Below, piece by piece: positions 2,080-5,000 of a stretch of DNA of 64,000 nt. The notes under the pieces are model-generated. The model made no database searches, was not told the origin of the DNA, and saw nothing but the letters and a program-made list of their open reading frames with translations. Where the stretch lies: contig NC_058133.1 of the NCBI RefSeq assembly GCF_016433145.1, positions 256,915,560-256,979,559 of the forward strand, read 5' to 3'. Each line of letters starts with the position of its first letter. Within the stretch, counting starts at the first letter, position 1. The position numbers were made by a program, and so were the translations under genes. The DNA comes from Gracilinanus agilis. Its lineage: Eukaryota.

Positions 2080-5000
2080 GGGAATGTTGATGGGGGGAGG
2101 GGAGAAATGATGGGAGTGCCCAAGGTCCTTTGGGAGAACCAGACATAGTGGAGACATAGGAGGCAGGTCTACCCTAGGGATAGAGAAGGAGGGGGTAGAT
2201 ACCCTATTCTGGATAGGAGTTATTTTACCTCCCACAAAGGCGTGTCTGTGGCTTCCCATCCATAGATACGTAAGAACTGGAGGCAAAGAAATGAGGATTA
2301 GGAAAAGTTCAGGACTGGCTTATTCAACCCTTGCTGGTCCAGGACTTCCTGTCCAACATTAATTCTTATGAAGTTAGAGTCTCAGCCCTAATCCCAGAGA
2401 TGAGAGTATTAATAGGTTTTGTGGTAGATTGGGCCCTTCATCAAAAGAGGTATAAATTGTGAGTGTCTGGCATTGGAGACTCCTAAATTTGAGCCAGTTG
2501 GAGGCACTCCTGACCCTTTTCTACTTCTTTCCCCCAGTTGCTCCTCGACATGGCTTACAGAGTCTTGGGAAAGTTGCCATCGCCCGGCGCATGCCACCCC
2601 CAGCCAATCTGCCGAGTCTGAAAGCCGAAAACAAAGGCAATGACCCCAATGTCTCGCTAGTGCCGAAAGACGGGACAGGATGGGCAAGCAAACAGGAGCA
2701 GCCCGACCCCAAGAGGTGTGGGGAACAGAAAAGAAATGTTCCGACTTCAGCTCTTTTCATAGGGGATCTGGTGTAATAGAGTTGGGGTTTGGACTAGCTC
2801 TTTATGAACAAATAGGAGAACCAGAACCAAGAATATGGGGACCTGAAGAGGGCTGGGCCTGAATTTTTGTCATATAAGGAGAGAAAAAACAGATCAAGGG
2901 ACATGAAGCTTTCTGATTTGATTTGTGAAGCTGTCTTCTCTAAATGGATAGGAAAGGTGGCCTAACCCTTCTGTCCTTCCATCTCCCTCCAGTTCCGATG
3001 CCTCAACTGCTCAGCCGCCGGAATCGCAGCCACTGCCGGCTTCACAGACGCCTGCCTCCAGCCAGCCGAAACGCCCCCCAGCAGTCCCCGAGGTATTTTT
3101 GAGAGAGGTTCAGCCATATTTGGGATAAAGAAGAAAGGCCATTAGCCCACTTTTCAATTTCCATTCTTCTCCCAACAGAACGCCCCTTCGGTTCCAAGCG
3201 GGGTAAAGTCTTGGGCACAAGCCAGTGTCACCCATGGAGCGCACGGGGATGGTGAGTTGGGGACATTGGCGTATGCTTTTCTGAATGAAGGACAGATGTT
3301 TTGTTTCTTTTACAATAGTCCTTCATTTCCTTCTTCTTAGTAACCCCCTTTTTAAGGCCTGGCCTCTATAATGGTGGCCCTTCCCTCCCTAGAGGCTGTC
3401 AGAAATATGGTTGGGATTTTTTTTTGTTCGTTCCCTTATTATTTAATCTATGTTCACTTTCCCAGGAACCAAATCTCTGTCATGTTAGGCTTTTTAGGCA
3501 AAAGTAGAATATTCCTTACCAGAGCCAACTCTCCTTGGGTGATAAGGAGCCCCCATATCCACTTATGAATTGAGGGCAGGGAGAGAGGTTCTAGTCTAAA
3601 ATCTGATAATTTAGTATTTTGCAGATGTTTGATGTGTTTGATCATACTGAGGACTTTCTGTCCTTCACTCATCTCTTACAGGTNNNNNNNNNNNNNNNNN
3701 NNNNNNNNNNNNNNNNNNNNNNNNNNNNNNNNNNNNNNNNNNNNNNNNNNNNNNNNNNNNNNNNNNNNNNNNNNNNNNNNNNNNNNNNNNNNNNNNNNNN
3801 NNNNNNNNNNNNNNNNNNNNNNNNNNNNNNNNNNNNNNNAAAAAAAAAAGTTTTATTGCTACTTTTTAAATGACTGTTTTCACTGCCCATTGTTGCCCCC
3901 ACCCCACCCCCTTCAAGGGGTGATTCAAAATTACTTCTTTGTTCTGTTATTCTTGACCTATGTGGTGTTTCCCATGCATCCTTTCCCAAAAGGCCTTCTC
4001 TTCCAGAACCAATAGCTGATGTGATCAACTTTGTTCTTCCCTATTCTTGTTATCCACATTAAGTTGCTCTTGGTAGTTACATCTCTTTGTTTTTCTTTTC
4101 CTTTCTGTCTCTAATCCTCAAACTTGTAACAGATTCCACAACTTGGAGGGATGGAGGTGGGCGGGGCCCTGATGAGCTGGAGGGCCCGGACTCCAAACTC
4201 CATCATGGTCACGACCCCCGGGGGGGGCTCCAGCCCTCCGGCCCTCCCCAGTTCCCTTCCTACCGCGGGATGATGCCGCCCTTTGTGAGTCTTGGGTCTT
4301 GAGAAAAGGGGACTAGGAAATAAAGGGATAGCAAGAGGGTTGGAATAGGGATTTGATGGGGAGGATTGGAATTCTTGGATTCCCCTCTAAGCACAAGTTT
4401 TGGGCCCTCTTGCAGATGTACCCCCCATATCTCCCGTTCCCTCCTTATGGACCACAGGGGCCTTACCGATACCCTACTCCTGATGGGCCCAGGTGAGAGA
4501 ACAAGCACTGGGCTTGGACCTGGGGTGGAAGGGTTGTGGGACTGAGGGTTAAGATACGTAGAGTTTGGGAGACTGGACAGACTGGGACCTGAGGGAAGGA
4601 GATGCATGTCCTAGGAAACAGAGCCCCATTTAGAGGTGTAATCCATTCACATACCCTTAATGCAGCCGATTCCCCCGGCTGGCTGGCCCCCGGGGCTCAG
4701 GTCCCCCCATGCGCCTGGCAGAGCCTGTGAGCCGACCCTCCATCCTCAAGGAGGATAACCTCAAGGAATTTGACCAGCTGGATCAGGAGAATGATGACGG
4801 TTGGGCGGGTGAGTGGAGAATACAAGGAGAACTGGACAAAGGGAATCTTTGGAACAGGATCTGCTGGGAGAAAAAAGCTAGGATCAATGAGGGAAAAGAT
4901 GAGCTCTTTCAGGAGTTTGGGGTGGGGGGTGGAAGTACCAATGGTGAAGAGTTTGGGTAATGAGGGGTGGTAATAGAGGCACTCTGAGGGGTCAGTTGGA

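What the first reader, a model, noticed from the sequence alone, without database searches (positions are those of the whole stretch)
2680..4172. Candidate overlapping (dual-coding) ORF in the -1 frame of PRRC2A exons 3-7
Seen: ATG at 2680 has strong Kozak context (A at -3, G at +4) and opens a frame one base before the PRRC2A frame. It stays open across the normal splice junctions: [12 protein letters not shown]|[33 protein letters not shown]|[25 protein letters not shown]-[exon 6, in gap][12 protein letters not shown], ending at a double TGA TGA (4170-4175). About 12 synonymous sites where a T would create a stop in this frame all avoid T, twice by using the rare CCG codon (CCG GAA, CCG AAA), although CCT/GCT are very common elsewhere in the gene. 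Exon 4 has 6 NCG codons in 33, and these G's are first positions of Ala/Gly/Asp/Glu codons in the alternative frame. If exon 6 is 144 nt as I recall for human, the product is 130 aa with a CxxC (CLNC); from memory the human frame is also open. Inference: a conserved Cys-containing microprotein hidden inside a translation-initiation regulator. Caveats: several upstream ATGs make simple leaky scanning unlikely, the ATG is partly forced by the GGA-TGG (GW) codons, and CpG retention extends beyond this ORF.
Basis: partly seen in the sequence, partly recalled or inferred. Interest (0 to 1): 0.75.

Follow-up and report, generated by a model that had tools for sequence, protein, structure and literature searches.

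The report
Conserved second reading frame in PRRC2A
Inside the opossum PRRC2A gene a second reading frame, shifted by one base, stays open and is conserved from frogs to mammals, so the gene probably encodes a second, unstudied small protein; one exon of it is unread in this assembly.

Summary
ATG 2680 has A at -3 and G at +4. The -1 frame is open through the exon 3 tail, exon 4 and exon 5, then 12 codons of exon 7, ending at TGA TGA 4170-4175. Exon 6 lies in the N gap except for its first two bases, so the ORF cannot be shown complete here. Within this window the open frame is not remarkable: about 1.8 runs of 70 or more codons are expected per gene.

Orthologues change the verdict. The same ATG opens an intact -1 ORF in a non-primate eutherian (130 codons), a murid (130), a newt (162) and a frog (141). 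In the three full mRNAs it is the longest -1 run of the CDS; the chance of that stretch being open is 2-6e-4 each. Main-frame synonymous divergence is lowest inside the ORF. Synonymous changes are placed so as to spare the -1 protein (permutation P 0.0013, 0.016, 0.058; controls not significant).

UniProt already lists the product as uncharacterised (mouse, 130 aa), and PRRC2B carries a homologous ORF. No paper on it was found. The CxxC is not conserved and translation is unshown.

Verdict: probably a real, ancient dual-coding region.

The parts
2641..2643 (+). TGA in the -1 frame, 12 codons upstream of the ATG; it is the 5' limit of the open run
   Evidence: The run starts at main codon 73 in the rodent, newt and frog mRNAs as well.
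2680..2715 (+). Start codon (A of GGA plus TG of TGG; A at -3, G at +4) and the first 12 codons of the -1 ORF, at the end of PRRC2A exon 3 (exon 2538-2715)
   Evidence: The ATG and its context are identical in L002, L010, L013 and L014.
2993..3092 (+). Exon 4: 33 codons of the -1 ORF plus the first base of a junction codon. It holds 6 NCG codons.
   Evidence: 30 of 33 residues are identical to mouse UniProt A0ABJ3HNS9. 4-fold divergence to the eutherian L002 is 2/21.
3179..3251 (+). Exon 5: junction Glu, 23 codons, and the first two bases of a junction Trp of the -1 ORF
   Evidence: An 18-residue stretch is identical to the mouse entry.
3682..3839 (+). Exon 6. Only its acceptor AG (3680-3681) and first bases GT (3682-3683) are read; 3684-3839 is an N gap hiding the rest of the exon and the start of intron 6.
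   Evidence: Orthologous exon 6 is 144 nt in L002, L010, L013 and L014. The gap was not filled.
4133..4175 (+). Start of exon 7 (exon 4133-4284): the last base of a junction codon, 12 codons of the -1 ORF, then the double stop TGA TGA at 4170-4175
   Evidence: The same double stop is present in L002 and L010. The newt and frog read on for 32 and 11 more codons.
1888..1939 (+). Conserved 5' leader of PRRC2A, running into the N gap 1940-2079 that hides the main start codon and the first coding exon. It ends with the first two letters of a conserved uATG.
   Evidence: 47 of 52 bases are identical to the murid mRNA L010:213-264. A uATG at -16 with a 28-codon start-overlapping uORF is present in rodent, newt and frog.

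Best explanation
The window (most likely Gracilinanus agilis) carries the marsupial copy of an ancient overlapping gene. The -1 frame of PRRC2A exons 3-7 encodes a second protein of about 130 residues. It is basic, rich in Trp, Arg, Gly and Pro, has no known domain and is probably disordered. It starts at an internal AUG in strong context 254 nt downstream of the main AUG.

Shown by comparison:
- The ORF and its AUG are kept in eutherians, a newt and a frog.
- Selection on it depresses main-frame synonymous change.
- The changes that do occur spare the -1 protein, most strongly in the parts encoded by exons 4 and 6.
- PRRC2B carries a homologous ORF, so it probably predates the PRRC2A/B duplication.

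Inferred, not shown: the route by which ribosomes reach the internal AUG.
- One route is a shorter alternative transcript that lacks the main AUG.
- The other is use of the canonical mRNA, by leaky scanning and/or reinitiation after the conserved short ORFs: a uORF at -16 that overlaps the main AUG, and +1-frame ORFs at +37 and +124.

Whether this particular genome keeps the frame open in exon 6 is unknown.
For: 1. Intact -1 ORF from the same ATG: L002 130 codons with a 144-nt exon 6; murid L010 130; newt L013 162 and frog L014 141.
2. It is the longest -1 run of each full CDS: 142 against 103 in the rodent, 174 against 60 in the newt, 153 against 81 in the frog.
3. P(open given amino acids and codon usage) is 0.0006, 0.0002 and 0.00025.
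4. 4-fold divergence is lowest in the ORF. Window-rodent: 7/49 against 7/20 in exon 3 upstream of the -1-frame stop and 7/21 in the rest of exon 7. L002-rodent: 2/78 against 5/22, 2/15 and 4/25 downstream.
5. In rodent versus newt, 8 of the 12 codons before the ATG differ synonymously and the next 6 codons are identical.
6. In deep pairs, -1 identity is 0.61-0.69 inside the ORF against 0.25-0.32 downstream. In exon 6 it equals or exceeds main-frame identity.
7. Permuting where the synonymous differences fall gives lower -1 identity than observed (P 0.0013, 0.016, 0.058) and lower BLOSUM scores (P 0.0003, 0.004, 0.02). On -1 identity the flanking regions and the +1 frame are not significant; on BLOSUM one flanking control reached P=0.0097 (see evidence against).
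8. Database hits: UniProt A0ABJ3HNS9_MOUSE (130 aa, 97% identical) and a PRRC2B-derived homologue, A0A9L0RPZ6_HORSE. The motifs W.KG.KPT..LSRGIS and VVWARTKPPP are invariant in all 11 aligned sequences, which fixes a run of main-frame wobble bases in both paralogues.
9. The window's visible pieces match the mouse entry: 30/33 residues and 18/18.
10. No sign of a stable or covarying RNA structure.
Against: - Exon 6 of this genome is unread (N gap).
- Seven or eight AUGs, two in strong context, precede the alt AUG on the canonical mRNA.
- The AlphaFold2 model has mean pLDDT 35, and there is no Pfam family.
- Within mammals the -1 frame is no better conserved than the +1 frame (0.84 against 0.82). 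Three synonymous changes at the end of exon 5 give radical -1 changes.
- The parts encoded by exon 5 and exon 7 show no deep -1 constraint, and the C-terminus differs between mammals and amphibians.
- The shift of differences from codon position 1 to position 2 is not significant.
- One control region gave BLOSUM P = 0.0097.
- Only five lineages were sampled. The UniProt entries may be automatic translations of alternative transcripts.
Confidence: 0.75

Rival explanations
1. A nucleotide-level element (splicing enhancers of the short exons 4-6, a protein- or RNA-binding site, or an RNA structure) constrains the synonymous sites. The -1 frame is open only because the constrained sequence happens to lack stops. 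No second protein is made.
For: - The constraint is strongest in exons 4 and 6 and weak in exon 5 and the start of exon 7, so it tracks exons as much as it tracks the ORF.
- The predicted product has no confident fold.
- Many AUGs precede the alt AUG.
- Within mammals, -1 identity is about equal to +1 identity.
Against: - The placement of synonymous differences favours the -1 frame specifically.
- The ATG and its -3 and +4 bases are conserved at wobble sites, whereas the 12 codons before it vary freely.
- The frame also stays open through the poorly constrained exon 5, and runs past the mammalian stop in amphibians.
- The folding z-score is 0.11 and the covariation term is +0.62.
Confidence: 0.15
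2. The ORF is real in other tetrapods but is interrupted in this opossum within the unread exon 6. The window would then hold a lineage-specific loss.
For: Exon 6 carries about 10 at-risk sites in orthologues, and none of it can be read here.
Against: - The visible 82 codons are intact and 85% identical to the mouse product (my count).
- Exons 3-5 show the same low synonymous divergence as in eutherians.
- Exon 6 is the best conserved part elsewhere.
Confidence: 0.07
3. A chance open frame in a G+C- and Pro-rich gene with few off-frame stops.
For: - About 1.8 -1 runs of 70 or more codons are expected per gene, and a 151-codon run is seen at 9562-10014.
- The +1 frame of the rodent mRNA has runs of up to 223 codons.
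Against: - The 151-codon run is not conserved: the longest L002 run there is 74 codons, and the rodent runs are 84 and 96.
- The exon 3-7 run is conserved in five lineages, with P(open) of 2-6e-4 each.
- It is homologous between the paralogues.
Confidence: 0.03

Closest known systems
UniProt A0ABJ3HNS9_MOUSE ('Uncharacterized protein', 130 aa), with the PRRC2B-derived entries A0A9L0RPZ6_HORSE (142 aa) and A0A8I5KXM2_HUMAN
   Same: Same ORF. The mouse entry is 97% identical to the -1 product of the murid PRRC2A mRNA L010, and matches the window's exon 4 and exon 5 pieces at 30/33 and 18/18. The horse entry is the paralogous ORF (53-57% identity, same invariant motifs).
   Different: These are unreviewed, unnamed entries with no function, and no paper could be found. 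The window's copy is a marsupial one and is incomplete because of the gap. The human entry was only seen in a hit table; it was not fetched, aligned or compared.
POLGARF, the conserved overlapping ORF in POLG mRNA (PMC7059407; bioRxiv 10.1101/2020.03.06.980391)
   Same: A long alternative-frame ORF inside or overlapping a conserved CDS. It was recognised by conservation and reduced synonymous variation, and its product is predicted to be largely disordered.
   Different: POLGARF starts at a CUG in the 5' leader, upstream of the main AUG. Here the start is an AUG 254 nt inside the CDS, behind several AUGs. This ORF is shared by amphibians and by a paralogue, and its translation is untested.
SEP-53BP1, an internal overlapping ORF in TP53BP1 reached by promoter switching and reinitiation (PMC10193022); also nested iORFs translated from alternative transcripts (PMC11526972)
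   Same: An internal out-of-frame ORF whose AUG lies downstream of the main AUG. The published routes (alternative transcripts, reinitiation after a short uORF) are the two routes proposed here. The conserved uORF at -16 and the short +1 ORFs fit the reinitiation route.
   Different: No expression data exist for the PRRC2A ORF, so the mechanism is only an analogy. PRRC2A is not mentioned in PMC11526972.
XL-alpha-s/ALEX in GNAS and other classic mammalian dual-coding genes (PMC1868773, PMC2329644)
   Same: Two proteins from overlapping frames of the same exons, with constraint visible in both frames.
   Different: ALEX and XL-alpha-s start close together on one transcript. BAT2/PRRC2A is not in the supplementary lists of PMC2329644 that could be searched.

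Membership tests
Conserved overlapping (dual-coding) ORF within a vertebrate CDS | Uninterrupted alternative-frame ORF of about 100 codons or more inside the annotated CDS, in this window | tested here: inconclusive
   70 codons are open from the ATG to the end of exon 5, and 12 more in exon 7 before TGA TGA. Exon 6 lies in the N gap 3684-3839.
Conserved overlapping (dual-coding) ORF within a vertebrate CDS | ORF and start codon conserved in orthologues beyond chance | tested here: met
   The same ATG and an intact ORF occur in L002, L010, L013 and L014. P(open) is 2-6e-4 per lineage.
Conserved overlapping (dual-coding) ORF within a vertebrate CDS | Main-frame synonymous divergence reduced over the overlap relative to its flanks | tested here: met
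   4-fold divergence is 0.14, 0.15 and 0.03 in the ORF, against 0.23-0.35 just outside it and 0.3-0.56 in the rest of the gene.
Conserved overlapping (dual-coding) ORF within a vertebrate CDS | Substitution pattern that spares the alternative-frame protein (coding signature) | tested here: met
   Permutation of the synonymous differences gives P 0.0013, 0.016 and 0.058 for identity and 0.0003, 0.004 and 0.02 for BLOSUM. Controls and the +1 frame are not significant on -1 identity; one flanking control gave BLOSUM P=0.0097. -1 identity exceeds +1 identity in deep pairs. The signal is weak within mammals.
Conserved overlapping (dual-coding) ORF within a vertebrate CDS | Evidence of translation (ribosome footprints in that frame, peptides) | not testable with these tools
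No paper or supplement that could be searched mentions it.
PRRC2 alternative-frame protein (UniProt A0ABJ3HNS9_MOUSE / A0A9L0RPZ6_HORSE) | Sequence similarity of the product to the family | tested here: met
   The exon 4 piece matches at 30/33 (E 1e-19) and the exon 5 piece at 18/18 (E 6e-12) against P0424.
PRRC2 alternative-frame protein (UniProt A0ABJ3HNS9_MOUSE / A0A9L0RPZ6_HORSE) | Invariant motifs W.KG.KPT..LSRGIS and VVWARTKPPP (encoded by exon 6) | not testable with these tools
   The motifs are invariant in alignment A2, but they fall in the exon hidden by the N gap, which may not be filled.
   It reads CLNC in the window, CLNH in L002, CLNR in the murid, CIDG in the newt and CLST in the frog.
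Synonymous constraint caused by a conserved RNA structure | Unusually stable fold, or compensatory base-pair changes | tested here: not met
   The z-score is 0.11 for the 393-nt ORF RNA. For exon 6 of four species the covariation term is +0.62, with 2 of 33 pairs showing double changes. The power of this test is low.

The most novel reading that the evidence does not exclude
PRRC2A and PRRC2B mRNAs are true bicistronic messages. Ribosomes that bypass the main AUG would reach the internal AUG and make the second protein. They could bypass it by leaky scanning, which PRRC2 proteins themselves promote, or through the conserved start-overlapping uORF at -16 followed by delayed reinitiation past the short +1 ORFs. 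Output of the overlapping protein would then report on, or feed back on, PRRC2 activity in start-codon selection.
Probability: 0.15. Interest if true: 0.85.

Novelty: new member of a known kind. Interest (0 to 1): 0.72.

Why it matters
Conserved dual-coding regions in vertebrate nuclear genes are few. One shared by frogs, newts, marsupials and eutherians, and by the paralogue PRRC2B, would be among the oldest.

- It would add an unstudied protein to a gene family implicated in start-codon selection, stress granules and m6A reading.
- Knock-outs, frameshift alleles and synonymous variants in PRRC2A exons 3-7 could then act through two proteins.
- It would explain the odd codon choices and retained CpGs in these exons.

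The claim is directly testable with existing Ribo-seq and proteomic data and a frame-specific tag.

Tried and rejected
- Chance explanation: accepted for the window alone, rejected once orthologues were read.
- Local T-avoidance test in exons 3-5: 1/23 against 19/68, Fisher P 0.019. It is suggestive but circular for an ORF picked because it is open.
- DNA of named orthologues from NCBI genomes: isoforms that are not the longest are not on record. The brushtail possum locus came back without DNA. So no second marsupial and no reptile DNA was obtained.
- Contigs L001 and L003-L009 do not reach exons 3-7. L012 is only 0.8% different from L010 and adds nothing.
- Codon-position spectrum (position 1 against position 2) as a coding test: not significant.
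- Pfam: nothing, apart from a sub-threshold DUF3678 hit in the frog.
- AlphaFold2 with 11 sequences: pLDDT 35, so no fold search was made.
- RNA structure: no support.
- Literature: eight searches and three supplement look-ups found no description. A preprint lists PRRC2C among triple-coding regions that arise by alternative splicing; the place within the gene is not given.
- Earlier findings of this scan: none.
- Human material left out: P0005 (primate-like by eye) was not looked up. The proteins named as human (P0303, P0305, P0306, P0337, P0426) were not fetched, aligned or compared. No contig that I took for human was fetched.
- Loci judged non-human by protein identity: L002, L010 and L012-L014.
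Full report
WHAT IS IN THE WINDOW

The region is the 5' part of PRRC2A (BAT2). The exon 3 peptide hits Pfam BAT2_N at E 5e-31. The 612-codon large exon (8675-10510) is 100% identical in protein to Gracilinanus agilis PRRC2A and 99.2% identical to Monodelphis, so the window is most likely from the agile gracile opossum.

Main-frame exons read from the sequence:
- exon 3: 2538-2715
- exon 4: 2993-3092
- exon 5: 3179-3251
- exon 6: from 3682
- exon 7: 4133-4284
- exon 8: 4416-4492
- exon 9: 4666-4807

- ATG at 2680, with A at -3 and G at +4.
- 12 codons to the exon 3 donor, 33 in exon 4, a junction Glu, 23 in exon 5, and a junction Trp.
- 12 codons in exon 7, then TGA TGA at 4170-4175.
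- An in-frame TGA at 2641-2643 closes the run upstream.

THE GAP, TESTED FIRST

Of exon 6 only the acceptor and the bases GT (3682-3683) are read. The N run at 3684-3839 hides the rest of the exon and the start of intron 6, and the letters after the gap are intronic.

Exon 5 ends in phase 1 and exon 7 begins with the last two bases of a codon. An intact PRRC2A therefore needs an exon 6 length divisible by 3, and the -1 relation carries across the gap. Whether exon 6 holds a -1 stop in this genome cannot be known from this assembly. I also did not read the G. agilis protein in that region.

IS THE WINDOW'S OPEN FRAME BEYOND CHANCE?

A -1 stop arises when a main codon ends in T and the next starts with AA, AG or GA.
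- Gene-wide (1907 codons), T3 is 0.236. Of 326 such sites, 84 carry T, against 94 expected.
- Exons 3-5 have 23 such sites and one T, against 19/68 at other sites (Fisher P 0.019). This depletion also covers the part of exon 3 upstream of the ATG.
- Resampling synonymous codons gives P = 0.012 that the visible ORF part is open.
- The same null expects 1.8 within-exon -1 runs of 70 or more codons per gene, and three are seen, including a 151-codon run at 9562-10014.

On the window alone the finding would be ordinary.

ORTHOLOGUES

The window's ORF was never joined for a search. Frames were tracked exon by exon in scripts, and searches used single exons by reference.

A search with the large exon led to L002, a metagenome contig from a non-primate eutherian that spans the exon 3 tail to the large exon. 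A representative search with exon 3, followed by a region search with the rat protein, gave named orthologues. DNA of large NCBI genomes could not be fetched. Natural mRNA contigs could be fetched:
- L010 and L012: a murid, 97.7% identical to rat.
- L013: a salamandrid newt, 90% identical to Pleurodeles.
- L014: a ranoid frog, 86% identical to Pyxicephalus.

In all of them the same ATG (GGA TGG, with A at -3) opens an uninterrupted -1 ORF:

| Lineage | ORF length | Note |
|---|---|---|
| L002 (eutherian) | 130 codons | exon 6 is 144 nt; same TGA TGA stop |
| Murid (L010) | 130 codons | same TGA TGA stop |
| Newt (L013) | 162 codons | reads past the mammalian stop |
| Frog (L014) | 141 codons | reads past the mammalian stop |

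In each full mRNA the run that starts at main codon 73 is the longest -1 run of the whole CDS:

| Lineage | This run | Next longest | P(open) |
|---|---|---|---|
| Rodent | 142 | 103 | 0.0006 |
| Newt | 174 | 60 | 0.0002 |
| Frog | 153 | 81 | 0.00025 |

P(open) is conditional on the amino-acid sequence and each gene's codon usage. Against a gene-wide longest-run null:
- The newt run exceeds all 300 simulations.
- The frog run gives P 0.0125.
- The rodent run lies below the 95th percentile of its null (165 codons).

The control run of 151 codons in the large exon is not conserved.

SYNONYMOUS CONSTRAINT

4-fold divergence:

| Region | Window-rodent | Window-L002 | L002-rodent |
|---|---|---|---|
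| Inside the ORF | 7/49 | 7/47 | 2/78 |
| Exon 3 upstream of the -1-frame stop | 7/20 | n/a | n/a |
| Rest of exon 7 | 0.33 | 0.33 | 0.23 |
| Exon 9 | 0.46 | 0.45 | 0.16 |
| Further downstream | 0.40-0.56 | 0.37-0.56 | 0.23-0.37 |

Between rodent and newt, 8 of the 12 codons before the ATG differ at synonymous sites. ACA GGA TGG and the next four codons are identical.

At sites where a T would make a -1 stop, the third base has changed at about nine sites among the five lineages, never to T.

IS IT THE PROTEIN OR JUST THE NUCLEOTIDES?

Amino-acid identity in deep pairs:

| Region | Main frame | -1 frame | +1 frame |
|---|---|---|---|
| ORF | 0.66-0.76 | 0.61-0.69 | 0.50-0.60 |
| Downstream control | 0.55-0.61 | 0.25-0.32 | 0.28-0.30 |
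| Exon 6 | 0.71-0.77 | 0.77-0.83 | n/a |

- In exon 6, four main-frame replacements in the newt (R/K, A/G, L/Q, R/P) are second-position changes that are silent in the -1 frame.
- I kept the number of main-frame synonymous differences fixed and permuted where they fall and what they change to. Observed -1 identity is higher than permuted (P 0.0013, 0.016, 0.058) and so are BLOSUM scores (P 0.0003, 0.004, 0.02).
- Only 7-8.5% of permutations stay stop-free. The flanking regions and the +1 frame are not significant, except for one control BLOSUM value of 0.0097.
- A paired comparison of -1 against +1 identity gives P 0.14, 0.023 and 0.07.
- RNA structure has no support: z = 0.11, covariation term +0.62.

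Limits of this evidence:
- Within mammals the -1 frame is no better kept than the +1 frame (0.84 against 0.82).
- The parts encoded by exon 5 and exon 7 show no deep constraint.
- The C-terminus differs between mammals and amphibians.
- The position 1 against position 2 test is not significant.

THE PRODUCT IN DATABASES

A search with the murid -1 product found three kinds of entry:
- UniProt A0ABJ3HNS9_MOUSE, 'Uncharacterized protein', 130 aa, 97% identical.
- A 142-aa homologue filed under PRRC2B in horse (A0A9L0RPZ6) and an unnamed human entry. The human entry was seen only in the table and not used.
- Unnamed ORFs from transcript contigs.

The alignment of 11 sequences has invariant W.KG.KPT..LSRGIS and VVWARTKPPP. 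This fixes a run of main-frame wobble bases in both paralogues. The CxxC is not conserved.

The window's exon 4 and exon 5 pieces match the mouse entry at 30/33 and 18/18. Over the 82 visible codons I count 70 identities.

There is no Pfam family, and the AlphaFold2 model has pLDDT 35, as expected for a disordered, overprinted protein. No paper describing the ORF was found.

HOW IT MIGHT BE EXPRESSED (INFERENCE)

The AUG layout is the same in rodent, newt and frog:

| Position | Frame | Context | ORF |
|---|---|---|---|
| -16 | -1 | weak | 28-codon uORF overlapping the main AUG |
| 0 | main | A at -3, T at +4 | PRRC2A |
| +37 | +1 | strong | 18 codons |
| +124 | +1 | strong | 23 codons |
| +165 | main | weak | in-frame Met |
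| +214 | +1 | adequate | 6 codons |
| +254 | -1 | strong | the ORF described here |

A further very short +1-frame ORF starts at +223 in the rodent and frog but not in the newt.

Simple leaky scanning past all of these is unlikely. Two routes remain, both with published precedents (PMC10193022, PMC11526972):
- Reinitiation after the short ORFs.
- A transcript that starts downstream of the main AUG.

PRRC2 proteins promote leaky scanning (PMC10123092), which makes a feedback reading conceivable but untested.

READS

VERDICT

The ORF is best filed as a new, uncharacterised member of the known class of conserved dual-coding regions. It is already present as unnamed database entries and is unverified at the level of translation. 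It is incomplete in this assembly.

Noticed in passing
window 1888-1939 and N gap 1940-2079: The PRRC2A 5' leader is 47/52 identical to the murid mRNA and runs straight into the N gap, so the main start codon and the first coding exon are unread here. In rodent, newt and frog the same 10-mer holds a uATG at -16 that opens a 28-codon uORF overlapping the main AUG, in the same -1 frame as the ORF under study.
   Followed up: partly
L010, L013 and L014, positions +37 and +124 from the main ATG: Two short +1-frame ORFs (18 and 23 codons) with strong Kozak context sit at identical places in rodent, newt and frog. They are partly forced by the conserved amino acids. They could act as stepping stones for reinitiation.
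   Followed up: no
window 9562-10014: A 151-codon open -1 run lies in the large exon, with P(>=151) = 0.009 under synonymous resampling. It is broken in the eutherian contig and the rodent mRNA, so it is best read as chance or lineage-specific.
   Followed up: partly
window 8675-10510: The large exon is 100% identical in protein to Gracilinanus agilis PRRC2A isoform X2 and 99.2% identical to Monodelphis. The window is most likely from G. agilis.
   Followed up: yes
proteins P0427-P0430, P0432 and P0441 (PRRC2B-type alt ORFs): The PRRC2B-type products have two different C-terminal endings. One reads on into the next exon and the other ends differently. This hints at alternative transcripts that carry the ORF.
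   Followed up: no
L010 +1 frame, main codons 299-521; L013 +1 frame, codons 361-516: Very long +1-frame open runs (223 and 156 codons) fall over roughly the same charged, Pro-rich part of the CDS in rodent and newt. This is probably a composition effect, because few codons there have T at position 2. It was not tested.
   Followed up: no
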